IMG/VR virus record: IMGVR_UViG_3300050821_009835
Coordinates: 62,001-126,000 of that record
Length of the DNA stretch: 64,000 nt
Direction: 5' to 3' (one strand)
The position numbers were made by a program, and so were the translations under genes. Each line of letters opens with the position of its first letter. Positions within the stretch are counted from its first letter, which is position 1. Positions 1-34,577 of the stretch are shown here, piece after piece. The notes beneath the pieces were generated by a model. It did not search any database. It was not told where the DNA came from and saw only the letters and a program-made list of their open reading frames with translations.

Positions 1-447
1 CCTCAAGATATCCAACCCGCTGATTTTTGGGAGGGACTTCTCTATCGCTTTCATCCGGATGTTATTCATCGTAAGTTAACGGATGTTTTGCGCTATCGAG
101 ATGGCATTGCTAAACCAGGCCCGTACTTCATCACTTCCATTAGTTCGCAAGGGAAGGAAGTTCAAAAATTGCTACAATTGTCTCCACTATTTTCTTATGA
201 AGAAATTGAAGAGCCTGTTAGTGAAGGAATCAAGCGGCGACTAAGGCGTAGCATGGCTCAAAAAACCATCTTAAACAAAATCACACGCCAACGTAAGAAT
301 TTAGGCAAGCCTCCACTGCCTGCCGAAGATATCTTGGCAGAGATTAAGTCACTCTATCGTGACGGTAAGGGCATCACTATTAAACACCAGATCTGTTTGG
401 TGGGTCCTGTTGCTTATGACTTCGTTGCCGCTAAGGTTGCAGTGTAG
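1..447 (+). CDS. Hypothetical protein, 5'-partial
   Basis: Frame 1 is open from base 1 to TAG at 445-447; the next ATG follows at 449. No motif recognised. Confidence 0.7.
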   Translation, partial: PQDIQPADFWEGLLYRFHPDVIHRKLTDVLRYRDGIAKPGPYFITSISSQGKEVQKLLQLSPLFSYEEIEEPVSEGIKRRLRRSMAQKTILNKITRQRKNLGKPPLPAEDILAEIKSLYRDGKGITIKHQICLVGPVAYDFVAAKVAV

Positions 448-448
448 T

Positions 449-1378
449 ATGGCTCTATTTATTGAGAAACCTGTTGCTTGCGTGTTTGACTGGGATAAGA
501 CATTAAGCCCAACCTATCAACAACGTCCCCTCTTCAAGGAATACGGCGTTGATGAAAAGACGTTTTGGGAGCTAACGCATACTCGCACTCGCGCTCACCA
601 ACATTATACTCAGAATCGCTGCTTCGTTGAGCATGAATATCTAAATACCATCCTCGATTACACCCGACGCGGCGTCTTCAAAGGATTGAATAACGCCAAG
701 TTAGAAGAGCTGGGTAAGACCATAGAGGTCTACCCTGGCGTAGAAGACTTTTTTCGTAAGTTGAAGGAAGAAGGTGCCGAACTTTATGTTGTTAGTGGCG
801 GGATTCGCTCCATGCTCAAGGGCATTCCATTTGTCAAAGAAACTGTAACCGAGATTTACGCAGCTGACTTCGCTGACTATGAATTGGACGATTTGGGAAA
901 GAAGATTCCGAAAGAGACAATTCAGTCTATTGTCGTCTCTGTTATTCCCACTGATAAGACTCGCATCATGAACGAGATTTCTAAAGGCTGCGCCCACGGA
1001 AATTTCGATACCAATGCTACTCTTGTTCAAGAGCGACGTCGCATTCCATTTAAACGCATGATCTACATTGGCGACGGAGTATCAGATATCCATGCATTTG
1101 AAACCGTTCGGCGCGACGGGGGATTTGCTGTTGCTGTGTATAATCCTAATGAACCGCAATTTGATCAAGCAGAAATGCTTCGTAGCAATGGTTGGGTAGA
1201 CCTGATTGCTACTGCCGACTTTCGGCCTGGTGCCAGTGCTCACGATTGGGTGCTTCAAAAGGTTCGTCGTATCCGGGATGGTATCAAGAAAGAAGAAATC
1301 GCGGTTAGAGAAGCTGAATTGGAACAGGTTCGGAAAGTCGCGCCGAAATACATTCACGCCTGGTCTAAAGAAGATTAA
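449..1378 (+). CDS. HAD-superfamily hydrolase/phosphatase
   Basis: Motif I FDWDKT (DxD), motif II VVSGG, motif IV IGDGVSD. Start moved to ATG 449 (MALFIEK). Confidence 0.85.
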   Translation: MALFIEKPVACVFDWDKTLSPTYQQRPLFKEYGVDEKTFWELTHTRTRAHQHYTQNRCFVEHEYLNTILDYTRRGVFKGLNNAKLEELGKTIEVYPGVEDFFRKLKEEGAELYVVSGGIRSMLKGIPFVKETVTEIYAADFADYELDDLGKKIPKETIQSIVVSVIPTDKTRIMNEISKGCAHGNFDTNATLVQERRRIPFKRMIYIGDGVSDIHAFETVRRDGGFAVAVYNPNEPQFDQAEMLRSNGWVDLIATADFRPGASAHDWVLQKVRRIRDGIKKEEIAVREAELEQVRKVAPKYIHAWSKED

Positions 1379-1389
1379 TTGGAGGGAAC

Positions 1390-2193
1390 GTGTCGCTATA
1401 TCGTTTGATTAAAGGATTTGTACCGCCTCAAGATTTGGAAGAGGTTATTGCTGAGACCTTTGTATTCAAGAAGGTATACTACACCCCAGAAAATCTTGAG
1501 CACCATATTGCCTATCTTTCGGACGACAAACCCCACCGCACTTCGCATGCTTACGCCGTCTCCTCTCATGTACCAGGACGTTATTTAAGTGCAGAACTTC
1601 CCTATATCAATTTACGCGATAGAGATGATTGGGAAAAATGGCACTTAACTCAACTTTATCGCAATGTTCGAAACGAAATGGGGCTCTGCGAAGACAATCG
1701 CATGCTCTTCAACGTGCAAGAGTATTACGGCGGGTCCGAACATGTACCAATGCATTGTGACGGTGAACTGTTAGAGTTTGATGTCCGCGAAAACGGGTCC
1801 TTGGATATCAAGCGTAGCATCCGACCGGATCTCGTGGCTGTGCTCACGCTGGTCAACGATACGGAGGCCGGGGGGACTCGCGTGCACCCGGTTGACGCGA
1901 TCGACAACTCTATCGTTATTCGCGCTGAAGCTGGAGACCTTCTGATCTTCGACAACGTGAACGCTTTCCACAGCGTCGACGCCTTGACCGGAACCGTGAA
2001 GCGCGACGATGGACTGCTCCGCATGACCATCGGTTGGCGCTCGTTGGGGGACCGCTGCCACTATATGGAGTACGATCGCGTGACCCCAATCAGTAAGGCA
2101 CAAGCTGAGTTGATGACCGAGAAGTGGTATGTGACCGAATGGCCCAAGCAGTGGGAGAAAATCCAAGCGGCAACGCAGAAAGCAGCATTCTAA
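1390..2193 (+). CDS. 2OG-Fe(II) dioxygenase, AlkB-like
   Basis: HxD (MHCDG), distal His (FHSV) and RMTIGWR with AlkB-type RxxxxxR spacing. SD GGAGG upstream. Confidence 0.8.
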   Translation: MSLYRLIKGFVPPQDLEEVIAETFVFKKVYYTPENLEHHIAYLSDDKPHRTSHAYAVSSHVPGRYLSAELPYINLRDRDDWEKWHLTQLYRNVRNEMGLCEDNRMLFNVQEYYGGSEHVPMHCDGELLEFDVRENGSLDIKRSIRPDLVAVLTLVNDTEAGGTRVHPVDAIDNSIVIRAEAGDLLIFDNVNAFHSVDALTGTVKRDDGLLRMTIGWRSLGDRCHYMEYDRVTPISKAQAELMTEKWYVTEWPKQWEKIQAATQKAAF

Positions 2194-2486
2194 TGAGGAA
2201 GATTACCTTCATCATCGCGCCAACCATCCCGAACTCCGAGCGCGAAGCACTTGAGAAGCACATTCTGGAGGCCGGGAACGATCCTGATTACACCGTCGTG
2301 ACCAACTACGAAGTCAAGGCCGTGGAACTTGGGGAGGATGAATTCCTTCTCGCGGCGGCGGACGGAATTCCTCTTGCTGAGGTCATGCTCCTGCGCAGCA
2401 AATTCGACGCAATCAAAGCGGGCGGCGTCCCTCCCGTCATCGTCGTGAATTACGAGATCGATCCTCTGATCATCGCCAGAGCCTAA
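2193..2486 (+). CDS. Hypothetical protein with internal duplication
   Basis: ATG overlaps upstream TAA (TAATG); two similar halves ending VVTNYEV and VVNYEI. Confidence 0.7.
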   Translation: MRKITFIIAPTIPNSEREALEKHILEAGNDPDYTVVTNYEVKAVELGEDEFLLAAADGIPLAEVMLLRSKFDAIKAGGVPPVIVVNYEIDPLIIARA

Positions 2487-2741
2487 ATGGCAAAGTGGAT
2501 TGAATTCGAATTTGCCCCAACACCTCCCGGTCAAAAGACGCAGCGGTTCCTCGTCAAGACCAAGGATGGCGGCGAAATATTGGGCGAAGTAAAGTGGTTC
2601 GGTCGCTGGCGGAAGTATTGCTTCTTCCCGGCACCCGGTACTATCTTTGAAGAGGATTGCCTAGAAGACATTTCTGGATTCCTCAAACAAGTATCCTTTG
2701 AATACAAGCACAGATCGAAAATGAAAGCAGTAACTGCATGA
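2487..2741 (+). CDS. Hypothetical protein
   Basis: Abuts the upstream stop and overlaps the downstream start (ATGA). Confidence 0.7.
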   Translation: MAKWIEFEFAPTPPGQKTQRFLVKTKDGGEILGEVKWFGRWRKYCFFPAPGTIFEEDCLEDISGFLKQVSFEYKHRSKMKAVTA

Positions 2742-3577
2742 ATTACAATGAACGTGACCTCTGGCGTCAAATCTTTATTGATGTCAAAAAGGACGGTAAG
2801 ATTGTCGCTCCGCGTGATAGAGAGATTATAGAGGTTGAAAACTATCACTACGAGCTTCCGCCGTTTGTTCGTTTCTGCACCCTGGTCCCACGTGATTTGA
2901 AATTCGACTATATCCGCGCTGAAACCAACTGGATGCTCCGGGGCGACCCCTATGATCTCAGTATTGGGCAGGCGAGCAACATCTGGCGTAACATCGTTGT
3001 TGACGGCAAACTGAACAGCAATTACGGATATGCTTGGTACACCAAATTTGGTTTCGATTTTGTCGTTGAGCAATTGATTCAAGACAAGGATTCCAGGCGG
3101 GCTAGTACGGTAATTGTGGAACGGGAGCATCTGGACTTACGCCAGAAAGATGTACCTTGCACTGCTTACATCAACTTCCGCATCCGGGAAGACAAACTGA
3201 ACATGAGCGTTCATATGCGCTCTCAGGATGCAGTTTACGGGATGGGGAATGACGCTCCAGCCTTTAGTTTTCTACAAGAGATGGTATTTGTTCTGCTTCG
3301 TGATAAATATTATCCCGATCTCCAAATGGGGACCTATCATCACACATCTGACAGTTTCCACATCTACACTCGTCATTATGAAATGCTGGATCAACTTGTT
3401 GCAGAGGATGTAGCATTCACGTCCACGCCATTCCCTCGCATCCAAGATTCTCAAGAAGTCGATTATCTGCTTTCCAAGAATATCGGACGGCAAACGCTTA
3501 CGGGTACCCCTCCTCTTATTCAGTCAAATTTTAAGTTTGCTAAGTGGTTGGAAACAGGAGAGATAGGGATTTTGTAA
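2738..3577 (+). CDS. Thymidylate-synthase-fold enzyme, dCMP hydroxymethylase type (T4 gp42-like)
   Basis: Glu62 (AETNW), SRRA, catalytic PC141T and RSQDAVYGMGND. Asp172 sits at R+11, where ThyA has Asn177 and T4 gp42 has Asp179. Confidence 0.8.
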   Translation: MNYNERDLWRQIFIDVKKDGKIVAPRDREIIEVENYHYELPPFVRFCTLVPRDLKFDYIRAETNWMLRGDPYDLSIGQASNIWRNIVVDGKLNSNYGYAWYTKFGFDFVVEQLIQDKDSRRASTVIVEREHLDLRQKDVPCTAYINFRIREDKLNMSVHMRSQDAVYGMGNDAPAFSFLQEMVFVLLRDKYYPDLQMGTYHHTSDSFHIYTRHYEMLDQLVAEDVAFTSTPFPRIQDSQEVDYLLSKNIGRQTLTGTPPLIQSNFKFAKWLETGEIGIL

Positions 3578-3621
3578 GGGTTTTTATTCCTTAAAATACT
3601 ACGACAACGGTATTGTTTCTT

Positions 3622-4092
3622 ATGAGGAAACTACTAGCGGTCGCAGTGTTTACTATCGTGTTTCTTTTAGGAACCATCGTCTCCGCTCAGGAAGTGGACG
3701 TAGGTAATCTTCACAAGCTTGCCTTAGCAATTTCTAAAGCAGAAGGGTTCGGGGTAAAAAACACAATCCCTACCCGCTATCACAATCCTGGTGATATTCG
3801 TACATGCCGTCCAGGTCTTCACTATCCTGGTCAAGTGGGGATCAGCCACCACTGCTATGTTATTTTTTGTAGCGACGCTGCTGGATTTTCTGCTTTGGAA
3901 TCCAACCTGCGTAAGATTGCAACTGGTAAATCTGTTTACTATGCACCAGACATAACCATCAATAAGATGGCGCGACTGTATGCCACTAATTGGCACACCT
4001 GGGCTAAAAACGTGGCCAAGAATCTCGACGTTCCTACCGATACTCGATTAGCGGATTTGTTACTAGTTTTCCCAGTGGATCTCGAAAAATAA
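3622..4092 (+). CDS. Secreted lysozyme-like protein (NNPGNI-type motif)
   Basis: Signal-peptide-like N-terminus MRKLLAVAVFTIVFLLG; AEGF...YHNPGDIR...GFSAL motif set. Confidence 0.55.
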   Translation: MRKLLAVAVFTIVFLLGTIVSAQEVDVGNLHKLALAISKAEGFGVKNTIPTRYHNPGDIRTCRPGLHYPGQVGISHHCYVIFCSDAAGFSALESNLRKIATGKSVYYAPDITINKMARLYATNWHTWAKNVAKNLDVPTDTRLADLLLVFPVDLEK

Positions 4093-4126
4093 TGCCCATT
4101 TTTGCGACATTAGAGTATTGAAACTC

Positions 4127-5143
4127 ATGAGCACAATAACAAAGCCCTTCCGTGTTAGTTACTATAACCCATCCCATGTTGTTGACGGGCGAGCACTTCT
4201 TCTGTCCACTGTTGTGGACGCTACCAATGGCGATGAAGCCAAGAAGATTGTAGAAAGCGGCAATACTGCCAAAGCGGTTAAAGCATACCCGTTCTATCGG
4301 ACCTTGAAGCAACCAACACGTAAAACATGGTATATTGTGTCCGGCCCGGACTCACAAGCAACCAAAGATGTCCTTAAGGATCTTACGGGTCAAATAAGCC
4401 ATGACAAACACGACCAATTGATGGATACCTTCACACCCAAGGAAACCACTGCCAGTTCACTTCAGCCTTTAAAGAGCGGCGTGAGATTTCCAGCTTCGTC
4501 TGTGAAGACCAGTGTCTCCCAAGCCAGTAGTCAGATTCCTGGCACTTACCGTTGGCATGGGTCAAAATATCTTGTCGATGGGCGTTGTACAAAACTGGAT
4601 CCTGACGGGCCACAATTGACTATTCAAGAACCCCAGGCTGTTGCTCAGGCTGATGGATATGCAGATCCAGGTTGCACAGTCCAGCCTTCGGTCAAACCTC
4701 CGATTCCTCTCTTTATTATTCAACAGTCGACGTTTCCGGAAACAGTAAACTTCGCAATCGATACGGCCCTTCGCTTAAATCGATCGGTGACGTTCCATTT
4801 TGAAAATCGTGAATTGATCGCATTTCCGGACGGAACTTACATAACTGTTGGGGATACTAGGTCGTATACTGTCACTCCAGAAGTGCCCTCAGAAAAAGCC
4901 TCTAACGAGCTTCAATCAGAAGAAAAGTGTAAGGATGAGGATTGTTGTCTTTGTTATCCTGAAAATGCAGAGAAAGCTAAAACTATTGAGCAGCCCACTG
5001 TTGATGAATCAGTTCCTTTGAAAAGTTTGTTCTCCACAGAGCCCCCGAAGGCGATTGGTTTTTGGTCGACTTGGGGATTAGCAATCGGCTTCGTTGGAAC
5101 TGTCTTCCTCATCCGATATCTGGTTCATCTACTTTCTCACTAG
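4127..5143 (+). CDS. Hypothetical protein with C-terminal membrane anchor
   Basis: Long ORF; hydrophobic C-terminus WGLAIGFVGTVFLIRYLV. Confidence 0.7.
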   Translation: MSTITKPFRVSYYNPSHVVDGRALLLSTVVDATNGDEAKKIVESGNTAKAVKAYPFYRTLKQPTRKTWYIVSGPDSQATKDVLKDLTGQISHDKHDQLMDTFTPKETTASSLQPLKSGVRFPASSVKTSVSQASSQIPGTYRWHGSKYLVDGRCTKLDPDGPQLTIQEPQAVAQADGYADPGCTVQPSVKPPIPLFIIQQSTFPETVNFAIDTALRLNRSVTFHFENRELIAFPDGTYITVGDTRSYTVTPEVPSEKASNELQSEEKCKDEDCCLCYPENAEKAKTIEQPTVDESVPLKSLFSTEPPKAIGFWSTWGLAIGFVGTVFLIRYLVHLLSH

Positions 5144-5228
5144 ATTAAATTCTCACATTCTGGAAACGGGTTCACGTTACAGTAATAAGCTGAGTCGCTA
5201 AAAAAGTTCTCATTGGAGGGAACGCTCA

Positions 5229-5726
5229 GTGGATAATCTTGTCAAATTCAAGCTCTTACACCCCAGTGCAACACTCCCTAAACGTGGTACAGATGGCTCC
5301 GGCGGGTTCGACTTCTTTGTCCCTGAAGATGGCGAATTAGCGCCCGGTGAAAAGAAACTTATATCCTCCGGGGTTGCTCACGATCTCCCACCTTCGATAT
5401 ATCTTCAGAGTTTGATTCCCGATGAATTCGGCAATTCCAGAAAAACTCATATTGAGGTTCGTATACAAGGTATTCTATTCGATCGCTCAGGGCTAGGATC
5501 AAAGAAGGGCATCCGACTTTCCTTCACAGGCCTAATCGACAACGACTATCGTGGAGAGATCAAGTTAAGTATGGAGAATGTCGGTAAAGAGCCCTTCTCT
5601 TGGAAATCCGGGGAGCGGCTTTGCCAAATTGGCTATGCGCTATTATACGCTGGTGATGCTGTGCATACTGACGCACTTGTAGAAACAGCACGTGGTGCAG
5701 GCGGATTCGGTAGTACAGGGAGATGA
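5229..5726 (+). CDS. dut: Trimeric dUTPase
   Basis: All five motifs: GSGGFD, DRSGLG, GLIDNDYRGEI, RLCQ, RGAGGFGSTG; about 20-aa insertion before motif II. Confidence 0.92.
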   Translation: MDNLVKFKLLHPSATLPKRGTDGSGGFDFFVPEDGELAPGEKKLISSGVAHDLPPSIYLQSLIPDEFGNSRKTHIEVRIQGILFDRSGLGSKKGIRLSFTGLIDNDYRGEIKLSMENVGKEPFSWKSGERLCQIGYALLYAGDAVHTDALVETARGAGGFGSTGR

Positions 5727-5730
5727 CAAA

Positions 5731-6006
5731 ATGACGAGGTTACAAACTTTCATCCGTTGGTTGGATGGGTCATCCCCCAACAAAGATTTAGCACCAGAAA
5801 TAAATAAATCGCAGCGAGTTGCGAAAATCCAACTCACAAAATCACACCTCGAGATGCTTGTGAAAAAGAAGACTATTACTCTCAATTTACCCGACGTTCA
5901 GATCCAACTGACCCTATCTAAAGATAAGTCCCCCTCGTTTGATGATTTCAACCTGGATGATTTTAGTGATCTCAAATACATGTTCAGAGATTTCTTTAAG
6001 CGATGA
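5731..6006 (+). CDS. Hypothetical protein
   Basis: ATG 4 nt after the dut stop; ORF track. Confidence 0.6.
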   Translation: MTRLQTFIRWLDGSSPNKDLAPEINKSQRVAKIQLTKSHLEMLVKKKTITLNLPDVQIQLTLSKDKSPSFDDFNLDDFSDLKYMFRDFFKR

Positions 6007-8716: not shown

Positions 8717-9748
8717 ATGGACACATCAACACCCGGTTTAAAGACCTTTTGGCAAAAGCCAGAAGGCAGAGCAGGAGCAGTAGTTTTATTGGCTGCTAGT
8801 GCAGCAGGGATATACGGGTTCGGCCTGGCTCTCCCATTTCTCACTGCCATGCTCGCCGATACCCTCCATATGGCGTACTTGGCCGGGACTTTGTTTGCGA
8901 TCTTTGCGGTCATTTCTAACAACGATTTTCGTTCGGCTGTAAAAAATGGTTTTCAACTTATCATGCGTTGGAGTTTGGGTCGATTGATTGAACTTGATCC
9001 TATCGGTATTGAAAAGAATTACCGAGACGATATGACTCAGGAAAAAGTAAAGTTGGACAAAGGCGTGGAAGGCTGCGCCGGGGCTAAAGAGGGGCTTGAG
9101 CGCAATATTGCCAACAATAACGACGCTATTCAGCATGCCAAGTCTGAAATTTTTCAAACGGATCGCATGATTGCTTCAGAAAGGAACCCGGTTAAACTGA
9201 ACGGTCTGAATCTTAGCAAGCAACGATTTCTTGAAATCATTGCTAGAAAAATGGCCACCAACCAAAACCTGCAGAAGACACTAGACATGACTAACGGTCT
9301 GTATGAACGTTCTCAACGGATGCAGCAGTTGGCTGAATATAACATCGAAAATCTGAATGCCCAGATCGAGAATGACGAGCAAGAGAGAAACGCTATTCTG
9401 GAAGCCTACAAATCTCTCGGTCCTATGCAGAAGTTGATTCGCGGGGAACCCGAAGCACTAAAGACGTTCAATGCTGCCAGAGAATTCGCGGCACGCGACA
9501 ATTCACGGATGCTCGGGGCTATGAAAGATTTCTCAGCCTACTCTGAAAAGTATTTAACGGGTATGGATATCGAGCAAGGTGCCGCTACTGCTGATGCTGA
9601 AAAAATGATTAGTAACATTGAAAAAACAATGCAACTAACCAGTGGGGGTGGTGATACTGTACCCATGGGCATTGTTAGGGCTGACGCTGTTACGGTTCCT
9701 AACTCATCAAAAGCAGTAAGTGGTGATTACCTCGCTTCACTTAAGTAA
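8717..9748 (+). CDS. Membrane-anchored PspA/IM30-like coiled-coil protein
   Basis: Two N-terminal TM helices and a long coiled coil; SD AGGAGG. Family call is from architecture only. Confidence 0.55.
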   Translation: MDTSTPGLKTFWQKPEGRAGAVVLLAASAAGIYGFGLALPFLTAMLADTLHMAYLAGTLFAIFAVISNNDFRSAVKNGFQLIMRWSLGRLIELDPIGIEKNYRDDMTQEKVKLDKGVEGCAGAKEGLERNIANNNDAIQHAKSEIFQTDRMIASERNPVKLNGLNLSKQRFLEIIARKMATNQNLQKTLDMTNGLYERSQRMQQLAEYNIENLNAQIENDEQERNAILEAYKSLGPMQKLIRGEPEALKTFNAAREFAARDNSRMLGAMKDFSAYSEKYLTGMDIEQGAATADAEKMISNIEKTMQLTSGGGDTVPMGIVRADAVTVPNSSKAVSGDYLASLK

Positions 9749-9791
9749 AATTCAAACAAAAGTAAAAATTCAAATAAAAACGGAGATTAAA

Positions 9792-11624
9792 ATGTCAGAG
9801 ATTCACGTGAAGAAATCAGTAAAACTCTGGGTTGGCGGTTTGATTATCGCAGGATTGTTTTTCGGGATACATTACGGGATTATCCCAGTTCCTGCTATCG
9901 GTATTTTGAAGGCAGTTGTTCCACAGAAGGCGAATTTGCCAGACATTTCCGATGCTAAGATTGCTGATGTAAAACCTGAAGTCTTCCCATCCTCAATCCC
10001 TAACGGGTGCCAAGATCCTATCCGCGCTGAAAACTGGGCGTGGAATGCTAATATGGGTTGGAATTACTCCAATGGTGGAATCGATACCACCAAAGGCAGC
10101 ATTGCCGAAAAATACGGCGTCTGTGAACACATTGGACGGCAAGACGACAATGCTCAGATGCAGAATGATCTTCTTGCCTGTGCTAAGGACCTCAAAGAAC
10201 CACATTCAACCGAATGCTCTAACGGGGTTCAATTCATCACCATTATGGGCGATGGGGCAGGAGCATTTCTTGCAACTTTGAACGCTCAGGCTAAAAAGCT
10301 CTGTGCTGACTGTACGGCTGAAATTGTGGGAACTACGGGCTTCAGCAGAGGCGAAGATAAACTAATGGGGCCGCCCTCATGGAAGAATCCGCATTCAATG
10401 GTCGGCGACGGCTTAATTGCCGGGGTTCTTCGTGACGGTGATTGGAACACGGCTCAAAAGTATATTGGAGACAATGGACTTAAGAACAACCCGGATGAGA
10501 AAACATTTGATCCTGACGCGGTTAACTGGGTTAACGCTGGGGATTACGTCAAAGCAGCTGAGATGTATGTTGCCGGATATTGTGAAGACAGAAAAGTCAT
10601 CAAAAACGGCAAACTTACGGGCGAAACTGTCAATGTTTGTGTGAAAGGCGTAGTTACTTGGACGCCAGCCGATGTAACTGCTGCTGAAAAGGGCGGTGGT
10701 CTTCAAAATATCGTTAGCACCGAACAATACCGTTCACAAATGCCGAGTGCTTTAATCGGTATCAAGAAGTGGAATAAAACTCACTCGGACAAACTCGCTG
10801 CTCTACTCGCTGCTGCGCTTGAAGCAGGCGATCAAATTAGAGCTTATCCGAAGGCGCTCACGATCGCGGCTGATATTTCAGCTAAGATTTATGGGGAGCA
10901 AAATGGAGCTTACTGGGAGAAATATTACACCGGGACCACTGAACAAGTCTGCAGCAAACATTTAGAGGACGGCGCTTGCAGAGCAAGCAAGATGGCAGTA
11001 AAACTTGGTGGTAGCTATGCAGATAACATGCATGACGCCCTAGCTGAGTTTGGTGTCGATCCTGGAATGCCTTCTAACAATAACTTCAAGGCTACATACA
11101 CCATCTTCGCAAAGATTGTGGACCAGCAGTACCACCCTCTATTTGAGAAAACTCCTATCCCAGAATTCAAGGATATAGCAACGGCGGCTTATTTGTTACA
11201 AGCCAAGAGTCTTATGGATGATCCTGGCTCCGCCGCCGTCAAACCTCAATATTCGGCTGACGAGCAACCTACGGAGCAATTCGGTGATGTCAACAAAAAC
11301 ATCGAATTTAACACCGGATCAGCCGTACTTACTCCACAAGGGCTAGCAACTGTGGCTGGTATGAAGGATGATCTCGCCATCACTAAAGGCTATATCACTT
11401 TAGACGGCAATACCGATAACACGGGAAACGCTGATACCAACACAAAGCTATCCCTGGCTAGAGCAGAAGCTGTGAAGCTGGCAATCCAAAAAATGGCTCC
11501 TGGCGATTTCCCTTCGGAGCGATTCAGGGTTAATGGCTATGGGCCATCGAAGCCTGTTGCAGATAATTCAACCAACGAAGGACGGGCCAAGAATCGCAGA
11601 GTAGAAGTAATTCTGGCTAACTAA
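9792..11624 (+). CDS. ABC substrate-binding protein fused to a C-terminal OmpA-like peptidoglycan-binding domain
   Basis: N-terminal TM anchor; periplasmic-binding-like core (SRGEDK, DGDWN, VTWTP); OmpA motifs GNTDNTG...LSLARAEAV...GRAKNRRVEV. Confidence 0.85.
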   Translation: MSEIHVKKSVKLWVGGLIIAGLFFGIHYGIIPVPAIGILKAVVPQKANLPDISDAKIADVKPEVFPSSIPNGCQDPIRAENWAWNANMGWNYSNGGIDTTKGSIAEKYGVCEHIGRQDDNAQMQNDLLACAKDLKEPHSTECSNGVQFITIMGDGAGAFLATLNAQAKKLCADCTAEIVGTTGFSRGEDKLMGPPSWKNPHSMVGDGLIAGVLRDGDWNTAQKYIGDNGLKNNPDEKTFDPDAVNWVNAGDYVKAAEMYVAGYCEDRKVIKNGKLTGETVNVCVKGVVTWTPADVTAAEKGGGLQNIVSTEQYRSQMPSALIGIKKWNKTHSDKLAALLAAALEAGDQIRAYPKALTIAADISAKIYGEQNGAYWEKYYTGTTEQVCSKHLEDGACRASKMAVKLGGSYADNMHDALAEFGVDPGMPSNNNFKATYTIFAKIVDQQYHPLFEKTPIPEFKDIATAAYLLQAKSLMDDPGSAAVKPQYSADEQPTEQFGDVNKNIEFNTGSAVLTPQGLATVAGMKDDLAITKGYITLDGNTDNTGNADTNTKLSLARAEAVKLAIQKMAPGDFPSERFRVNGYGPSKPVADNSTNEGRAKNRRVEVILAN

Positions 11625-11628
11625 GACC

Positions 11629-12414
11629 ATGAATGAAGCTTTAGCAATTCTGTCACCTAACCAAGCAGTTTCGAAGCGGGTGTTAAGAACACTGGTGATT
11701 GGACAAATAGTAATCTTTGTCCTTTACTGGGCGTTCTTAACACCCGCCGTAATACCAAAACCCGCTGAAGTACTCGAGTCATTAAAAGAACTTTGGGGTA
11801 ATGGGCTGGTTATGGAGTTGATAACAAGCCTTTCATTGTATGCCGAAGCATTGTTATGCGCAACTGTTTTTTCAATGCTTCTAGCTTACGCTTCAACCAT
11901 AGCATTCTTTAAGCCTGTAGCCAACTTTTGGGCAAAGCTACGCTTTCTCGGGTTAGTGGGGCTGCCTTTTCTTTTCACTCTCTATGTACAAGGAGCGCAC
12001 AACTTAAAACTAGCACTTCTAACATTCTCAATCTCGGTGTTCATGATCACGTCCATGCTTGATGTGGTGGACCTTATTCCGAAGGAAAAATATGACTTGG
12101 CTAGGACACTGAGAATGAACGAATGGCAGGTGCTTTGGGAAGTAGTAATCCTGGGTAGGATTGATGTCTGCTTTGACGTTATCAGGCAAAACGCAGCCAT
12201 CGGATGGATGATGCTCCCTATGATCGAAGGATTGTTCAGATCTGAGGGTGGTATTGGGGTGCTCCTAGATACCCAAAGTAAATATTTCAAACTATCAGAG
12301 GTAGCCGCTCTTCAAATTGCGATATTAATGCTCGGGCTAGGGCAGGATTACTTGATTGGGGTTATAAAGGGCTGGACTTGTCCTTACGCCAATCTGCTTC
12401 TGGAAAGAAGATAA
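11629..12414 (+). CDS. ABC transporter permease (NitT/TauT type)
   Basis: About six hydrophobic segments; EAA-like loop YDLARTLRMNEWQVLWEVVI; SEGGIG. Confidence 0.88.
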   Translation: MNEALAILSPNQAVSKRVLRTLVIGQIVIFVLYWAFLTPAVIPKPAEVLESLKELWGNGLVMELITSLSLYAEALLCATVFSMLLAYASTIAFFKPVANFWAKLRFLGLVGLPFLFTLYVQGAHNLKLALLTFSISVFMITSMLDVVDLIPKEKYDLARTLRMNEWQVLWEVVILGRIDVCFDVIRQNAAIGWMMLPMIEGLFRSEGGIGVLLDTQSKYFKLSEVAALQIAILMLGLGQDYLIGVIKGWTCPYANLLLERR

Positions 12415-12416
12415 CA

Positions 12417-13076
12417 GTGACAGCAAAACTATTGATGATTCTAACTCTCTTTGTTGGCCTTAGCTACGGCCAAGAAGTCATTATGAATCAACCCTCTGCC
12501 GATGTACCAAATCAAGGTGGGGTATTCTTGAGATTTGACTCTTTTTACACGCAGCACCCCGCCTATTTTTCCGGGATATTCAATACGGCGGTGGGATTAG
12601 GTTTTAACGCCGAAACGTCGTTCAACATCGCCGATGCCACTCACGAATCAAGGGTCTTTGTCCCAGGATTTAAATGGCAAGTGTGGAAGAAAAATAACCT
12701 GATAGCTTATGTTGGTGACCAAATCATCGTACCCAACAAAGGTAATGCAGGTAATAATTCGTATGAGGCTGTAGCTTGGTCAACGGGCAATCTAAGATTT
12801 ACGGGTGGTTCGTTTCAGTCTCATAACAGTGTCCAGATGGGCAACAGAGCAGGGGCATTTGCCGGGGTTGAATGGACCACAAGGACATTTAGAAATGGGT
12901 GGACTTTGATGCCAGGCATTGACTGGGCCTCGGGAGCAGGTTCTAACGGGTATTATAGTCCAGGTCTGTCTTTCATGCACAAATCCTTTTTCGTATGTCC
13001 GGGCTACATGATTGGTAACCCTGGAAATAAATTTGGAGCACATCAATCCTTTGTAATGATAGGAGTAACACTATGA
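12417..13076 (+). CDS. Secreted beta-rich protein, candidate outer-membrane barrel
   Basis: Signal peptide (AKLLMILTLFVGLSYG); alternating aromatic/Gly strands; C-terminus SFVMIGVTL. Confidence 0.5.
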   Translation: MTAKLLMILTLFVGLSYGQEVIMNQPSADVPNQGGVFLRFDSFYTQHPAYFSGIFNTAVGLGFNAETSFNIADATHESRVFVPGFKWQVWKKNNLIAYVGDQIIVPNKGNAGNNSYEAVAWSTGNLRFTGGSFQSHNSVQMGNRAGAFAGVEWTTRTFRNGWTLMPGIDWASGAGSNGYYSPGLSFMHKSFFVCPGYMIGNPGNKFGAHQSFVMIGVTL

Positions 13077-13249
13077 AAGCAAATCTGTTAATCTGCACTT
13101 GCGGGGATTGTCTACACTGGGAACTTCTCCAGCAATCAATCGTCTGCAAATCCTGTGGCATAGAATTTCCCATCCCGGGACTCGGCAAATTCATTCAGGA
13201 ACACGTTGACAAACACGATGCTTTGGCCTGGAAAGAACACGAGAGATAA
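13073..13249 (+). CDS. Small Cys-rich protein (58 aa)
   Basis: CTCGDC...CKSC; ATGA overlap upstream, abuts the ATPase start. Read by hand. Confidence 0.6.
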   Translation: MKANLLICTCGDCLHWELLQQSIVCKSCGIEFPIPGLGKFIQEHVDKHDALAWKEHER

Positions 13250-14086
13250 ATGCAGCATTGCCCTTACAATACGGATTGTTCAGGGTGCGTCTCATTTGAA
13301 GACACTCTGCTTGACGTTTCCCATGTTGGCCTTTCCTACGGCGACAAAGTAATTCTTCGCGATGTGGACGTCAAAGTCCAAAAGGTTAAAAGACGTTGCC
13401 ATATTCAAGGGCAGGTTGTAGGTTTCCTTGGCCCGTCGGGTATCGGCAAAACTCAACTTTTCAGAATCATGGCGGGTTTGAACAAACCGACCTCTGGTGC
13501 TGTTTTTGTGAACTCCCATCACGACCCTGTTCACGCCGGAATGGTGGGTGTTGTCTCTCAAAACTACACACTATTCGAGCATCGTACAATTTACGGCAAT
13601 TTGATGCTCGCCGCCGACAAAAAGTACAAGGATGATCATGAGAGGAAAGAAAAAGTAGATAACTATCTCAACATGTTTGAGCTGTACGACAAGAAACTAC
13701 TGTATCCGGCTCACCTCTCAGGAGGTCAACGCCAGCGAATCGCAATTGTCCAACAGCTACTTTCTAGCGACCATTTCATTTTAATGGATGAACCATTTTC
13801 TGGCCTTGATCTCGTAATGCTAGAAAAAGTTTGCAAGTTGATCGTGGATGTTTCGTGCTTAGATGAGCTTAATACTATCATTGTGGTTACCCACGACATC
13901 ACAGCGGCAGCGAGTGTTTCCGATCATTTATGGCTGATGGGTCGTGACGCAGGCTTACCGGGAGCTAGGATTCAAGAAAATTACAACATGGTCGACTTGG
14001 GATTGTGTTGGCAAGAAAATATCACCACACGTCCTGATTTCATCGATTTTGTGCGGACTGTAAAAGAGAGGTTCCGAACGCTATGA
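13250..14086 (+). CDS. ABC transporter ATP-binding protein
   Basis: Walker A GPSGIGKT, signature LSGGQ, Walker B ILMDE, H-loop VTHD. Confidence 0.95.
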   Translation: MQHCPYNTDCSGCVSFEDTLLDVSHVGLSYGDKVILRDVDVKVQKVKRRCHIQGQVVGFLGPSGIGKTQLFRIMAGLNKPTSGAVFVNSHHDPVHAGMVGVVSQNYTLFEHRTIYGNLMLAADKKYKDDHERKEKVDNYLNMFELYDKKLLYPAHLSGGQRQRIAIVQQLLSSDHFILMDEPFSGLDLVMLEKVCKLIVDVSCLDELNTIIVVTHDITAAASVSDHLWLMGRDAGLPGARIQENYNMVDLGLCWQENITTRPDFIDFVRTVKERFRTL

Positions 14087-16362: not shown

Positions 16363-17568
16363 ATGAGCACAATGACTACCCCTGTAGACCAGCGCATTGT
16401 CAACCTGAATCAGCAGCTCATTGAAGCCGCCGACGCTTATTACAAAAAAGCCTCTCCCATTATGTCTGACGTGGCATTCGACGCCAGTGAAAAAGAATTA
16501 AAACAGCTGGTTGCAGCCTACCCTCTGTATGCTTCACTTGCCACCTATCTACAGAAAGTCGGCTCTGACCTGAAGGCCGTTTCTGGTCGCACTCCTCACC
16601 GTATCCCGATGCTGAGCATCGAAAACATGTACACTGAAGAAGATTTCCTCGCTCAGTATGATCGTTTTGGTGGCGTCCCGGTTGTGATTGAACCGAAATT
16701 TGATGGCGTAAGTATTTCCATGACCTACGTGGACGGTGAACTGACCAAGGCGCTGACTCGCGGGGATGGTACCAGTGGCGAGGACATGACCGCGCAGGTT
16801 CGCTGCACCGAAATCCCCACCTCTCTGGGCAAGGTTCTTTCGAGGAGCAACGGCGAGCCCGTGAAGGTCCCCGCGCTGGTTGAAATTCGCGGCGAACTGG
16901 TCATGCACGAAACGACCTTGAAGGCTCTGAACGCCAAGTATGCCGCATCCGGCCAGAAGACCTACGCCAACACGCGCAACCTGACCGCTGGCACGATGAA
17001 GTTGAACCCGGCCAAGTATGCGGACACGATCCGCGAGCGCAAGATCACCATTCGCCCTTGGGACGTTATTGCTGACCAAGTTCCTGACAGCCGCATCGAG
17101 CGTCTCCGCATGATTAAAAATGCGGGGTTCAGCGAACCAGAAGGTATCTTGCTCACCGACCGTAGCCAAGTGATTCCGGCGCTGCGCAAGATGCTGGAAC
17201 TGAATAAAACTGCCGATATCTACCGCGACGGCGTAGTGATGAAGGTCGACAGCGTGAAAACAAGTCGCTCATTAGGACTGGCCTCCAAGTACACAAACTA
17301 TCAGACATGCTTCAAACCGCAAGGTGACAAGGGAGTTACTTATCTACGTGAAGTCGTGTGGCAAGTGGGAAGAACAGGTCGCATTTCTCCAGTGGGAATT
17401 GTAGATCCTATAGTCTTGGCTGGGGCTACTATTACTCGAGTCAATCTCAACAACATTACTTGGATTCGAGCTATGCGGATAAAGCTAGGAAGTCGGATTT
17501 CTTTGCTTCGCAGTGGGTCGGTAATTCCTGTAGTAGAACGAGTCTTGGATGACGATCCCTCAAAATGA
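16363..17568 (+). CDS. ligA: NAD+-dependent DNA ligase, N-terminal part (adenylation + OB domains)
   Basis: YY..D..FD domain Ia, MLSI, EPKFDG (KxDG), RNLTAG, DGVVMK, GRTGRISP, RSGSVIP; stops before the Zn finger. Confidence 0.93.
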   Translation: MSTMTTPVDQRIVNLNQQLIEAADAYYKKASPIMSDVAFDASEKELKQLVAAYPLYASLATYLQKVGSDLKAVSGRTPHRIPMLSIENMYTEEDFLAQYDRFGGVPVVIEPKFDGVSISMTYVDGELTKALTRGDGTSGEDMTAQVRCTEIPTSLGKVLSRSNGEPVKVPALVEIRGELVMHETTLKALNAKYAASGQKTYANTRNLTAGTMKLNPAKYADTIRERKITIRPWDVIADQVPDSRIERLRMIKNAGFSEPEGILLTDRSQVIPALRKMLELNKTADIYRDGVVMKVDSVKTSRSLGLASKYTNYQTCFKPQGDKGVTYLREVVWQVGRTGRISPVGIVDPIVLAGATITRVNLNNITWIRAMRIKLGSRISLLRSGSVIPVVERVLDDDPSK

Positions 17569-18499
17569 AATTCATTCGATGGCCCAGTTCTTTGCAGCGG
17601 TAATACTTCGCCAAATTCTGGGCTTTTTCTAACTGAAATATGTATTCACTCTTTACCTCAAAAATCCAGTTAAGGCGAGGCACGTAGAAATCTGGATAGT
17701 AACGTCGTTCTGTCCCATCCACATCAGTGTAAAAGATAGGTAACAACGAAGTCATTTCAAAATCAAAATCTTCTTCTCGAAATCCCTGTTGTAACAATTG
17801 CTCCAGAACTCCCGATTCATACCCAGCTAGAACGAGTACCCGACCCGATGGCAACCGAAATTTTTTGTGCTGATTCTTAGCCGCTGTAGACATGACCTTT
17901 CTGGCAATTTCATGGTTTTGCATTGGATGCCTTACTCCATAATTTTCAATAAAAGTCGCCACCGATTTTGCCTGTACAGCCTTTGTTTTCAAAGGATGCC
18001 CGCCAAATCTAGAAAGCCAAGTGGCTTGAGTCTTCGCGAGGATCTCTGGCACCTTTGAGGGGTGGTCCATTCCATACTTCTCTACCATAGATTGGTGAAT
18101 AGCATCTTGAACGATTTTGACAGAAAAGGGATTCTCAAAACCGTATCTTTCCAAACAAGTTTGCTTTCCTCTAGCCCGGATCCTTGGATTCTGGAAACCA
18201 ACGTCGTGAGTCTCTCTCATCGTCTTCTGTTTCTCGGCGTCTTTCATCCAGAGATTTCTATCTTTAAGCAACGCGGGGCAGTTTGCGAGGTTGTCCACGC
18301 AACATAATAATTGATTTTTGAATTGGAATCTTGCGATTCCACCACAACCGTAGGCACAAAAACCGGACCCTACATAGAGTTGTGGCTTACTCTTAGTCCA
18401 TGTTTTTCCTTTCAATTTGTCGATCGGACAATGAGCACGATGGGCATTGTGACTTTGGCTATTCTTGAATTCTCTGCCACATTCTGAACAAACTAGCAT
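17471..18499 (-). mobile_element. Homing-endonuclease-like gene (YG.ENP repeats + PD-(D/E)xK) splitting ligA
   Basis: N-terminal C2H2-like motif, repeated [EK][RK]YG..[NH]P units, YYPDFY...IFEVKS; SD AAGGA upstream. Confidence 0.8.
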
Positions 18500-18567
18500 A
18501 CTAATTCCTTTGTTACAAATGGATTAGAAAGCTACCCGATTTTTGAGCATTAGTGGTAGTATTACGA

Positions 18568-33837: not shown

Positions 33838-34560
33838 TTATGTGTTGACTGTGGCTGGTTCCTTGATTAAAATGGGTGTCTGTGGTGTAGAATGATTCAT
33901 TCTCTCAAGTTCCCATTCTGTCGGAGCATCAAACTGATGAACACGGAATCGCGGCCCGTTTGCAGCCCCTTGCCCATATGTATCAGTTTGATCATTAACG
34001 AGAACGGCCTGATACTGATTTTGAGCAAAATAATTGCTGATGCTATTCAGCAAAGCTGTAATCGTAGGCATCTGAAAACTGCTAGTCGTTGGAGTTGACG
34101 AGGTTACAGCATCGTTGGCAAACTGAGCATTATCCTCATTCTTTTCAATCATAGTTCGAACATGATTCATCCAGAACCAAAGTTCGTCATCTCGTTGAAA
34201 TTGAGGCTTCAAGTATTGTTTTAGATATGTCATGACGGTCATTGGAATATGGTCATCACGATAAGCGTAATTGAAGTGCCCGTATGGACCTGGTTTCCAT
34301 GCTTCTTTCTGGAAAGCTGTGGTCAATTTTTGATCATTGAGCGTGGCTGCATACTGTTCTAGAACACCTGCCATCTTACGAAGTTGTTGGGCGCGAATCT
34401 GATAGTGTAACTGGATTCCCGCCTGGCCATTGTTTTGAATAGGAGGAAATTTTCCAGCCCGAGCGTTCACCCAAGACTGGAGATTCCCAAATTGAGTTTG
34501 AGACATATGCCCCAAAAAATTGAATGGTGGGCCAGGAAGGGCATAAACGAACTTAGTCAT
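33838..34560 (-). CDS. Hypothetical structural protein
   Basis: GGAG SD before ATG 34560; baseplate operon context. Confidence 0.6.
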   Translation of the reverse strand: MTKFVYALPGPPFNFLGHMSQTQFGNLQSWVNARAGKFPPIQNNGQAGIQLHYQIRAQQLRKMAGVLEQYAATLNDQKLTTAFQKEAWKPGPYGHFNYAYRDDHIPMTVMTYLKQYLKPQFQRDDELWFWMNHVRTMIEKNEDNAQFANDAVTSSTPTTSSFQMPTITALLNSISNYFAQNQYQAVLVNDQTDTYGQGAANGPRFRVHQFDAPTEWELERMNHSTPQTPILIKEPATVNT

Positions 34561-34577
34561 AAAATCTCCAGAAACGA

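What the first reader, a model, noticed from the sequence alone, without database searches (positions are those of the whole stretch)
449..3577. Candidate cytosine hypermodification cluster: HAD + AlkB-like oxygenase + dCMP-type TS-fold enzyme
Seen: the TS-fold protein has Asp (codon 3251-3253) at the specificity position, in GMGND. Known: Asn177 gives dUMP specificity in ThyA, Asp179 gives dCMP specificity in T4 gp42 (GFRND), and AlkB-type dioxygenases act on nucleobases. Inference: the phage makes a C5-modified cytosine that may be further oxidised or tailored by the co-transcribed oxygenase and phosphatase. No glucosyltransferase is visible in the window. The partial ORF 1..447 and upstream genes may be part of the pathway.
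Basis: partly seen in the sequence, partly recalled or inferred. Interest (0 to 1): 0.7.

Follow-up and report, generated by a model that had tools for sequence, protein, structure and literature searches.

The report
Predicted dCMP hydroxymethylase module, jumbo phage
A soil jumbo phage carries a thymidylate-synthase-like enzyme with the full active-site signature of a dCMP hydroxymethylase, so it probably builds 5-hydroxymethylcytosine DNA. Beside it sits a phosphatase plus an unnamed iron/2-oxoglutarate oxygenase; that rare oxygenase family was found with such hydroxymethylases in every record I could check.

Summary
Codon 3251-3253 is GAC, Asp172, in GMGND of a 279-aa TS-fold protein (2738-3577). 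The HAD phosphatase (449-1378) and the 2OG-Fe(II) oxygenase (1390-2193) lie just upstream on the same strand.

At the four diagnostic TS positions (E. coli L143/C146/D169/N177) the protein reads D/C/D/D, as T4 gp42 does. That predicts a 5-hydroxymethyl-dCMP synthase. It argues against a dUMP enzyme, a methylase and a 5-hydroxy-dCMP synthase.

"AlkB-like" is not specifically supported. The oxygenase is a generic double-stranded beta-helix enzyme, equally close to AlkB homologues and prolyl hydroxylases (Z about 14). It belongs to a small unnamed family: 131 cluster representatives among 1.84 billion.

All eight records that carry the oxygenase and could be checked also carry a hydroxymethylase-type TS homologue. 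Its upstream neighbour is either this HAD (jumbo-phage clade) or a P-loop kinase (other phages, one bacterium).

The HAD is phosphoserine-phosphatase-like and its substrate is unknown. Outside the window the genome holds an NDP-deoxysugar and glycosyltransferase cluster, a 5-hmdU-DNA-kinase-like protein and a dCMP deaminase.

The chemistry of the HAD-oxygenase pair remains inference.

The parts
1..447 (+). 3' part of orf180 (full gene G000:61905-62447). Function unknown; not a core member of the module.
   Evidence: No Pfam or PHROG hit. Only 30% identity to one ORF in L006 and absent from L012. No P-loop motif.
449..1378 (+). HAD-IB (phosphoserine-phosphatase-like) phosphatase, 309 aa. Catalytically competent; substrate unknown.
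   Evidence: PF12710 3.6e-12. TIGR01488 scores 42.5 bits against a cut-off of 45. HAD motifs are invariant in 42 homologues. AF2 pLDDT is 93. Best folds are SerB, PSP, MtnX and ThrH at Z 16-17; cytosolic 5'-nucleotidase III scores Z 13.8. Directly upstream of the oxygenase in L006 and L012 as well.
1390..2193 (+). 2OG-Fe(II) oxygenase of a small unnamed family, 267 aa.
   Evidence: HxD...H...Rx5R is invariant. AF2 pLDDT is 92. The fold is generic DSBH: ALKBH6 14.0, PHD 14.0, AlkB 12.9. There are 49 unnamed homologues, 131 representatives in 1.84 billion and no hit in 50,697 phage records.
2193..2486 (+). orf97, small ORF of unknown function between the oxygenase and the TS gene. Not conserved.
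   Evidence: No family hit. No tblastn match in related loci.
2487..2741 (+). orf84, small ORF of unknown function. Not conserved.
   Evidence: No family hit. No tblastn match in related loci.
2738..3577 (+). TS-fold enzyme, predicted dCMP 5-hydroxymethylase (5hm-dCMP synthase), 279 aa.
   Evidence: PF00303 59.5 bits. The best PDB match is T4 gp42 at 5e-15. E62, Y96, D138, C141, T142, R161, S162, D164, D172, H208 and Y210 match T4 gp42 at E. coli positions 58/94/143/146/147/166/167/169/177/207/209. It sits in a clade with RsoM2USA gp10 and three metagenomic jumbo phages.
3251..3253 (+). GAC codon for Asp172, the pyrimidine-specificity position (E. coli N177, T4 D179).
   Evidence: Read directly. 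Alignments.
5229..5726 (+). Trimeric dUTPase, part of the same conserved nucleotide-pool module.
   Evidence: PF00692 7.7e-21 and TIGR00576 104 bits. Found at the same relative place in L006 and L012.

Best explanation
The window opens inside a nucleotide-pool module of a soil jumbo phage (a 264.9-kb record, 78% complete).

Shown by sequence: the 279-aa TS-fold protein has every catalytic residue of the TS family. It also has the four-position signature of T4 gp42.

Inferred: it converts dCMP plus methylene-tetrahydrofolate to 5-hydroxymethyl-dCMP. After phosphorylation this is built into phage DNA in place of C. Three genes could support that route:
- A MazZ/MazG-like pyrophosphohydrolase just upstream (G000:61462-61944) is the candidate dCTPase.
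- The dUTPase and a dCMP deaminase keep the dUMP/dTMP side in balance.
- A small P-loop kinase elsewhere (G000:245201-245800) is the best candidate for the 5hm-dNMP kinase, or for a 5hm-pyrimidine DNA kinase.

The HAD phosphatase and the 2OG oxygenase form a conserved pair. Three context facts bear on what the oxygenase does:
- All eight checked records that carry it also carry a hydroxymethylase-type TS homologue, of either the C type or the U type.
- In other lineages its upstream neighbour is a P-loop kinase, not a phosphatase.
- In those lineages it lies among nucleotide kinases and a dUTPase.

The most likely reading is therefore that it oxidises a pyrimidine nucleoside or nucleotide, not DNA. 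The feature common to all its contexts is the 5-CH2OH group, which is the most economical target. The partner enzyme would add or remove the 5'-phosphate. The actual reaction is not shown.
For: TS signature and catalytic residues. The rules come from PMC13326640 sections 24 and 28 (N177D = dCMP; L143D/E = hydroxymethyl; D169N = 5-hydroxy-dCMP synthase) and from PMC8670742 (positions 147 and 177 separate modified-cytosine contigs from unmodified ones).

The next clade (Xp15, Effie) carries the TS homologue beside a carbamoyltransferase. That is the 5-carbamoyloxymethylcytosine layout of PMC8670742.

No second TS and no ThyX were found in the record.

The module is conserved in L006 and L012: DSPc, NDT-like, NUDIX, MazZ-like, HAD, oxygenase, TS, dUTPase.

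G001, a complete 299.9-kb relative, keeps HAD, TS and oxygenase although they are dispersed.

The oxygenase was found with a TS homologue carrying L143D in 8 of 8 checkable records: the window, L006, L012, L007 and G001-G004.

A P-loop AAA_28-like gene lies directly upstream of the oxygenase in 8 loci. In L008 and L010 a thymidylate-kinase-like gene and a dUTPase follow it.

In bacterial L007 the oxygenase is adjacent to a dUMP-hydroxymethylase-type TS protein and 6 kb from an HMUDK_hel gene.
Against: - No chemistry was measured. All specificity calls rest on residue rules taken from a few characterised enzymes.
- PW916 and MW202621 carry Asp at 177 but are annotated as dUMP or 'pyrimidine' hydroxymethylases next to a dCMP deaminase. 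Either those labels are wrong or the rule has exceptions.
- RsoM2USA has the TS homologue without the HAD or the oxygenase.
- In G001 the three genes lie up to 118 kb apart.
- The eight co-occurrences are not independent lineages, and I could not compute the base rate of TS homologues in large phages.
- One distant family member is fused to an F-box, which hints at a protein substrate.
- The nearest solved folds include prolyl hydroxylases.
- No T4 gp1-type dNMP kinase was found.
Confidence: 0.5

Rival explanations
1. Only the TS-fold enzyme concerns DNA modification. The HAD and the oxygenase are neighbours with another job. Examples would be hydroxylation of a host or phage protein (like Pseudomonas P4H on EF-Tu), or turnover of a small phosphorylated metabolite such as phosphoserine.
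For: - The best folds include prolyl hydroxylases at Z 13-14 and PKHD-type hydroxylases.
- A distant homologue is fused to an F-box.
- The HAD is closest to phosphoserine phosphatase, MtnX and ThrH.
- RsoM2USA lacks both genes.
- In G001 the genes are dispersed.
Against: - Found with hydroxymethylase-type TS homologues in 8 of 8 records, including a bacterial locus where the genes are adjacent.
- The neighbours are nucleotide kinases, a dUTPase and a MazZ-like protein in every lineage.
Confidence: 0.27
2. The end product is a uracil derivative. Either 5hm-dCMP is deaminated by the phage dCMP deaminase to 5hm-dUMP, or the enzyme accepts dUMP despite Asp172. A 5-hmdU DNA kinase then starts thymidine-type hypermodification.
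For: - A dCMP deaminase lies at G000:145183-145515.
- A P-loop protein hits PF18748 HMUDK_HMUD1 at 29.8 bits against a cut-off of 27.
- Asp-type TS homologues sit next to dCMP deaminases in PW916 and MW202621.
Against: - Asp at 177 and Thr at 147 are the modified-cytosine signature (PMC8670742).
- T4 also has a dCMP deaminase.
- No aGPT-Pplase-like transferase lies beside the kinase.
Confidence: 0.09
3. The TS-fold enzyme is a dCMP methyltransferase of the XP12 kind. The oxygenase then hydroxylates 5-methyl-dCMP to 5hm-dCMP, a nucleotide-level analogue of TET.
For: It would give the oxygenase a clear role. 2OG oxygenases that hydroxylate 5-methylpyrimidines exist: TET/JBP, and thymine-7-hydroxylase (the latter from my own knowledge).
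Against: - Position 143 is Asp, which correlates with water attack and a hydroxymethyl product (PMC13326640).
- The oxygenase also accompanies U-type hydroxymethylases (L007, G002).
- It has no TET_JBP similarity.
Confidence: 0.05
4. The enzyme is a MilA/BcmA-type CMP hydroxymethylase. With the upstream NDT-like N-glycosidase it would release free 5-hydroxymethylcytosine, as in mildiomycin or bacimethrin synthesis. The product would then not enter DNA.
For: - MilA is the second-best solved match (1.7e-10).
- A PF15891 Nuc_deoxyri_tr2 gene lies 5.5 kb upstream and is conserved in L006 and L012.
Against: - T4 gp42 is the better match.
- The setting is a phage replication and nucleotide module with a dUTPase and a MazZ-like protein.
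- No downstream antibiotic-pathway genes were seen.
Confidence: 0.04

Closest known systems
T4 gp42 deoxycytidylate 5-hydroxymethyltransferase (PDB 1B49/1B5D)
   Same: It is the best solved-structure match (5e-15). The residues at Glu58, Tyr94, L143->D, Cys146, H147->T, Arg166, Ser167, Asp169, N177->D, His207 and Tyr209 are identical.
   Different: - Identity is only about 25%.
- The window's protein has a 55-aa C-terminal extension.
- There is no adjacent beta-glucosyltransferase.
- No gp1-type dNMP kinase or gp56-type dCTPase homologue was found.
- The genome context is a soil jumbo phage.
Ralstonia jumbo phage RsoM2USA ORF10 ('putative thymidylate synthase')
   Same: It is the closest cultured relative: 49% identity over 95% of the length, same signature, same clade.
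   Different: - RsoM2USA also has a canonical Td (PMC8504454).
- It has no homologue of the HAD or the oxygenase.
- Its DNA composition has not been reported.
Xp15/Effie-type cluster (carbamoyltransferase + MazG + P-loop kinase + TS homologue), matching the 5-carbamoyloxymethylcytosine pathway of PMC8670742
   Same: The TS homologue is of the Asp type (33-37% identity). It is clustered with a pyrophosphohydrolase and a tailoring enzyme.
   Different: - The tailoring gene here is not a carbamoyltransferase (no PF02543 in the genome).
- The pyrophosphohydrolase is MazZ-like (PF18909), with no detectable similarity to the Xp15 one.
- The kinase is not in the cluster.
5-hydroxy-dCMP synthases (RB69 gp48, DLP3 gp80; PMC13326640)
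   Same: TS fold, Asp at 177 and an acidic residue at 143.
   Different: Their diagnostic D169N is absent here; the window's protein has Asp164.
AlkB / ALKBH and prolyl-4-hydroxylase 2OG oxygenases
   Same: DSBH fold and the HxD...H...Rx5R motif. Z is 12.9-14.0 over about 170 residues.
   Different: - Identity is 12-14%.
- There is no Pfam membership.
- AlkB homologues and prolyl hydroxylases score equally.
- The family is sharply bounded, with 131 representatives.
TET/JBP 5-methylpyrimidine dioxygenases of phages (PMC8256090, PMC13229309)
   Same: They are 2OG oxygenases tied to phage pyrimidine hypermodification.
   Different: - There is no sequence or top-50 structural similarity.
- Those enzymes act on DNA and pair with C5-methyltransferases.
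- This one pairs with nucleotide-level enzymes.

Membership tests
Thymidylate synthase / pyrimidine hydroxymethylase superfamily (PF00303) | Profile match above the curated cut-off | tested here: met
   59.5 bits against a cut-off of 24.3. phrog_160 3.1e-35.
Thymidylate synthase / pyrimidine hydroxymethylase superfamily (PF00303) | Catalytic Cys146, Glu58, Tyr94, phosphate-binding Arg166/Ser167, His207/Tyr209 (E. coli numbering) | tested here: met
   C141, E62, Y96, R161, S162, H208 and Y210; these columns are invariant in A2.
dCMP 5-hydroxymethylase (T4 gp42 type, EC 2.1.2.8) | Asp at the N177 position (cytosine specificity) | tested here: met
   D172, codon 3251-3253 GAC.
dCMP 5-hydroxymethylase (T4 gp42 type, EC 2.1.2.8) | Acidic residue at the L143 position (lets water attack the exocyclic methylene) | tested here: met
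   D138. The rule comes from PMC13326640 section 24.
dCMP 5-hydroxymethylase (T4 gp42 type, EC 2.1.2.8) | Non-His residue at position 147, as in modified-cytosine contigs | tested here: met
   T142, the same as T4 T149. PMC8670742 section 11.
dCMP 5-hydroxymethylase (T4 gp42 type, EC 2.1.2.8) | Makes 5hm-dCMP from dCMP and methylene-THF | not testable with these tools
   Needs an enzyme assay or in-vivo nucleoside LC-MS.
5-hydroxy-dCMP synthase (RB69 gp48 type) | Asn at the D169 position | tested here: not met
   D164 is retained. PMC13326640 section 28.
AlkB family (PF13532) | Profile match to the AlkB family model | tested here: not met
   No PF13532 hit at E <= 0.1. The only hits are PF13640 at 0.0066 and WelO5 at 0.06.
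AlkB family (PF13532) | HxD...H triad and Rx5R 2OG-binding motif | tested here: met
   H122, D124, H194, R211 and R217 are invariant. This motif is shared with other DSBH clades, so it is not discriminating.
AlkB family (PF13532) | Structure closer to AlkB homologues than to other 2OG oxygenases | tested here: inconclusive
   ALKBH6 Z 14.0, PHD 14.0, PHD2 13.4, AlkB 12.9.
TET/JBP 5-methylpyrimidine dioxygenases (PF12851) | Profile or fold match to TET_JBP | tested here: not met
   No Pfam hit. No TET or JBP entry among the top 50 Foldseek or VIA matches.
HAD superfamily, subfamily IB (phosphoserine-phosphatase-like) | Motifs I-IV (DxDxT, S/T, K, GDxxxD) and a Rossmannoid core with a C1 helical cap | tested here: met
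   D14, D16, T18, S116, K170, D209 and D213 are conserved. PSP, SerB, MtnX and ThrH match at Z 16-17 over about 200 residues.
HAD superfamily, subfamily IB (phosphoserine-phosphatase-like) | TIGR01488 score above the cut-off | tested here: inconclusive
   42.5 bits against a cut-off of 45.
Pyrimidine 5'-nucleotidase (NT5C3/UMPH-1) | Sequence or fold closer to NT5C3 than to other HAD enzymes | tested here: not met
   E 0.015 over 50 residues. Z 13.8, below PSP at 17. The only other support is a language-model look-alike at 0.93.

The most novel reading that the evidence does not exclude
The unnamed oxygenase is a nucleotide-level 5-hydroxymethylpyrimidine oxidase. It would convert 5hm-dCMP here, and 5hm-dUMP in U-type hosts, to the 5-formyl or 5-carboxy nucleotide, or to a reactive intermediate. 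The HAD or the P-loop partner would set the phosphorylation state. These phages, and a few bacteria with chromosomal hydroxymethylase/HMUDK islands, would then make a pyrimidine modification not yet described. In this phage it might be further decorated by the genome's deoxysugar and glycosyltransferase cluster.
Probability: 0.13. Interest if true: 0.85.

Novelty: new variant of a known kind. Interest (0 to 1): 0.55.

Why it matters
Phage pyrimidine hypermodification is a main route of escape from restriction and CRISPR, and a source of enzymes for epigenetic sequencing. Known cytosine routes start from a TS homologue and add sugar or carbamoyl groups, or start from a methyltransferase plus TET.

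A rare 2OG oxygenase family that accompanies both C-type and U-type hydroxymethylases would add an oxidative, pre-replicative branch to these pathways. Its alternating partner, a phosphatase or a kinase, fits a nucleotide-level role. It would also extend 5hmC-type DNA to a clade of soil jumbo phages related to RsoM2USA.

If the pair proves unrelated to the modified base, the finding reduces to one more predicted dCMP hydroxymethylase. That is useful for annotation but ordinary.

Tried and rejected
- tblastn of the oxygenase against 50,697 phage records found nothing.
- A single-sequence scan of viral contigs found nothing. The alignment-based scan gave 4 loci.
- The scan of 185,579 prokaryote genomes found only a 25%-identical relative in an Oligoflexales MAG, in an unrelated context.
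- Oxygenase membership in AlkB and in TET/JBP was considered and not met.
- The HAD as an NT5C3-type pyrimidine nucleotidase was considered. It stays a weak lead only.
- A Z-genome reading of the MazZ-like gene was rejected: there is no PurZ.
- No ThyX, second TS, thymidylate kinase, GT1, T4 beta-GT or carbamoyltransferase was found. The beta-GT control also found nothing anywhere, so that blank is uninformative.
- phmmer with T4 gp1 against all ORFs of the genome gave no hit.
- The MazZ-like protein shows no similarity to the Xp15, PW916 or Effie pyrophosphohydrolases.
- orf180 is not the P-loop partner seen elsewhere.
- The promoter and terminator scan found fewer sites than shuffles, so it adds nothing.
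- Reads: a soil metatranscriptome holds identical low-depth contigs over the HAD, the oxygenase and downstream ORFs. It covers a late structural gene equally, so transcription cannot be told from DNA carry-over.
- The context of the F-box fusion P0201 is not on record.
- No complex prediction was sent, because I make no binding claim.


Full report
**Where the window lies.** The window is bases 62001-126000 of a 264,912-bp IMG/VR virus record, 78% complete by CheckV. A soil metagenome run holds it letter for letter. The nearest cultured relative of the focal gene is the 344-kb Ralstonia jumbo phage RsoM2USA.

**The observation.** On the + strand, packed with gaps of at most 11 nt or with 1-4 nt overlaps, lie:
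- the end of orf180 (1-447);
- a HAD hydrolase (449-1378);
- a 2OG-Fe(II) oxygenase (1390-2193);
- two small unconserved ORFs (2193-2486 and 2487-2741);
- a TS-fold protein (2738-3577).

Pfam supports the HAD (PF12710, 3.6e-12) and the TS fold (PF00303, 59.5 bits against 24.3). It gives only a sub-threshold hint for the oxygenase (PF13640, 0.0066).

**What the TS-fold protein is.** Its best solved relative is T4 dCMP hydroxymethylase (5e-15), followed by MilA CMP hydroxymethylase and only then true thymidylate synthases. HMMER and MAFFT agree on three equivalences: E62 with T4 E60, C141 with C148, and D172 with D179.

I read the positions that recent work uses to sort TS homologues:
- N177D marks dCMP use.
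- L143D/E marks a hydroxymethyl rather than a methyl product.
- D169N marks the flavin-dependent 5-hydroxy-dCMP synthases (PMC13326640, sections 24 and 28).
- Positions 147 and 177 best separate modified-cytosine contigs from others (PMC8670742, section 11).

The window's protein reads D138, C141, T142, D164, D172. T4 gp42 is identical at all five positions. E. coli ThyA reads L, C, H, D, N, and the SP10 dUMP hydroxymethylase reads D, C, N, D, N. A maximum-likelihood tree places it in a clade with L012, L006, G001 and RsoM2USA gp10. That clade groups loosely with T4 gp42 and the Xp15/Effie clade, and lies apart from ThyA and SP10.

Xp15 and Effie carry their homologue next to a carbamoyltransferase, a MazG-type hydrolase and a P-loop kinase. 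This is the layout that PMC8670742 tied to 5-carbamoyloxymethylcytosine. I therefore predict a 5hm-dCMP synthase.

One caveat: PW916 and MW202621 also have Asp at 177, yet they are labelled dUMP or 'pyrimidine' hydroxymethylases and sit beside dCMP deaminases. Either the labels are wrong or the rule has exceptions.

**The oxygenase.** Thirty-seven homologues share H122-x-D124, H194 and R211-x5-R217. The AlphaFold model is confident (pLDDT 92) and is a double-stranded beta-helix. Its matches are flat: ALKBH6 14.0, Dictyostelium PHD 14.0, PHD2 13.4, AlkB 12.9, all at 12-14% identity. Foldseek against the PDB and Swiss-Prot, and the ESM Atlas, say the same. No TET or JBP entry appears.

So 'AlkB-like' is true only at the superfamily level. 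The family is small and sharply bounded:
- 49 unnamed proteins in the word-indexed search;
- 131 representatives at E <= 0.001 among 1.84 billion;
- none in 50,697 deposited phage genomes.

**Context of the oxygenase.** The upstream gene comes in two forms.
- In the window, L006 and L012 it is this HAD. A contig carrying a 52%-identical HAD is followed by an unannotated 264-aa ORF, which I could not verify as the oxygenase.
- In L007-L011 and L021-L023 it is a 180-190-aa P-loop protein of the AAA_28 kind, often overlapping the oxygenase by 4 nt. In L008 and L010 a thymidylate-kinase-like gene and a dUTPase follow.
- In G001 neither partner is adjacent.

Every record that I could search for a TS homologue has one: the window, L006, L012, L007 and all four IMG/VR records, two of which are only 15% and 42% complete. 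All carry Asp at position 143. G001, G003 and G004 are of the C type; G002 and bacterial L007 are of the U type.

In L007, a 7.6-Mb bacterial contig, the oxygenase follows the P-loop gene. It is divergent from a 595-aa TS-domain protein and lies 6 kb from an HMUDK_hel gene. Two other bacterial genomes have the P-loop gene beside two TS-domain proteins and two HMUDK_hel genes but lack the oxygenase. That makes the P-loop protein a plausible 5hm-dNMP kinase and the oxygenase an add-on.

G001, a complete relative with terminal repeats, keeps the HAD (55% identity), the TS and the oxygenase at three distant places. RsoM2USA has only the TS homologue.

**The HAD.** All HAD motifs are invariant. The model (pLDDT 93) is closest to SerB, phosphoserine phosphatase, MtnX and ThrH (Z 16-17). 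Cytosolic 5'-nucleotidase III scores 13.8. An uncharacterised Borrelia protein is the nearest Swiss-Prot model (TM 0.79). It is a small-molecule phosphatase or phosphotransferase, and its substrate cannot be read from sequence.

**The wider module.** Upstream of the window lie a dual-specificity phosphatase, an NDT-like protein (PF15891), NifU, a NUDIX protein and a MazZ-like pyrophosphohydrolase (PF18909). Downstream lies a dUTPase. L006 and L012 share this order.

Elsewhere the record has:
- a dCMP deaminase;
- no PurZ, no ThyX, no second TS and no Tmk;
- a 199-aa P-loop protein that passes the PF18748 5-hmdU-DNA-kinase cut-off, with no transferase beside it;
- at 9-28 kb, an operon with GDP-mannose 4,6-dehydratase, epimerases, a sugar C-methyltransferase and GT2 and GT6 glycosyltransferases.

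**Mechanism.**
- Shown: an intact TS-fold active site with the gp42 signature, an intact 2OG-oxygenase triad, intact HAD motifs, and the conservation patterns above.
- Inferred: dCTP is hydrolysed to dCMP by the MazZ-like enzyme, converted to 5hm-dCMP by the TS-fold enzyme, phosphorylated and polymerised.
- Inferred with less confidence: the oxygenase acts on a pyrimidine nucleoside or nucleotide. The 5-CH2OH group is the only feature common to its C-type and U-type settings. The HAD or the P-loop partner would set the phosphate state.

Rivals are listed with odds in their own section. The strongest is that the pair serves an unrelated role, supported by the prolyl-hydroxylase-like folds and by a distant F-box fusion.

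**Novelty and verdict.** The dCMP-hydroxymethylase call is a new member of a known kind. The HAD-oxygenase accessory, and the family's link to hydroxymethylase systems in phages and one bacterium, is not described in the papers I searched. The whole finding is a new variant of a known kind. Interest is 0.55. No chemistry is shown, the co-occurrence counts are small and partly non-independent, and read data could not show transcription.

Noticed in passing
outside the window: G000:C1:9000-28000 (L040): A minus-strand operon encodes GDP-mannose 4,6-dehydratase (9e-135), two NAD-epimerases, an SDR, a sugar C-methyltransferase (Methyltransf_14), two or three GT2 enzymes and a GT6/Galactosyl_T protein. 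It could glycosylate DNA or virion proteins.
   Followed up: partly
outside the window: G000:C1:245201-245800 (L035): A 199-aa P-loop protein passes the PF18748 '5-hmdU DNA kinase' cut-off (29.8 against 27 bits). Its neighbours are PP2C, UvrD, a NadM-like NUDIX protein, NAMPT, DUF3310, DUF7487 and a PARP-like protein; there is no transferase.
   Followed up: partly
L007, L042, L043 (bacterial contigs): These look like chromosomal islands for 5hmU-type hypermodification in bacteria. They hold one or two long TS-domain proteins of the dUMP-hydroxymethylase type, an AAA_28-like kinase, HMUDK_hel genes and DUF1643. L042 and L043 also hold an aminotransferase and an intein-containing dCTP deaminase.
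   Followed up: partly
window 16363-19500: The NAD-dependent DNA ligase appears split. The adenylation and OB domains are in 16363-17568 (+), and the HhH and BRCT domains are in 18553-19500 (+). A DUF7487 gene on the opposite strand (17471-18499) lies between them. DUF7487 copies also flank the oxygenase locus in L010 and lie at G000:247426-249453, which suggests a mobile gene.
   Followed up: no
window 9720-14086: A jumbo phage carries a 634-aa protein with a C-terminal OmpA domain (9720-11624) and an ABC-transporter ATPase (13250-14086).
   Followed up: no
L005 (Xp15) 5519-6001; L015 (PW916) 3280-4098: Two deposited annotations look wrong. Xp15 gp37, labelled 'putative DNA polymerase subunit', is a P-loop kinase-like protein next to the TS homologue. 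The PW916 'deoxyuridylate hydroxymethyltransferase' carries the cytosine-type Asp177/Thr147 signature.
   Followed up: partly
P0201 (428 aa, metagenomic): A distant member of the oxygenase family (5e-42) has an N-terminal F-box-like domain. This points to a eukaryote-like protein and possibly a protein substrate. No genomic context is on record.
   Followed up: partly
window 1-6000 and 34000-40000: A soil metatranscriptome run holds identical low-depth contigs over both the early nucleotide module and a giant late gene. Either the phage was active in that soil or DNA carried over into the RNA library.
   Followed up: yes
L031 (Oligoflexales MAG) 9420-11496: A 25%-identical oxygenase lies two genes from a YfbR-like HD-domain protein; I recognised it by eye from the N-terminal sequence and did not test it. 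It follows aldehyde and alcohol dehydrogenase-like ORFs. It is too distant to use.
   Followed up: no
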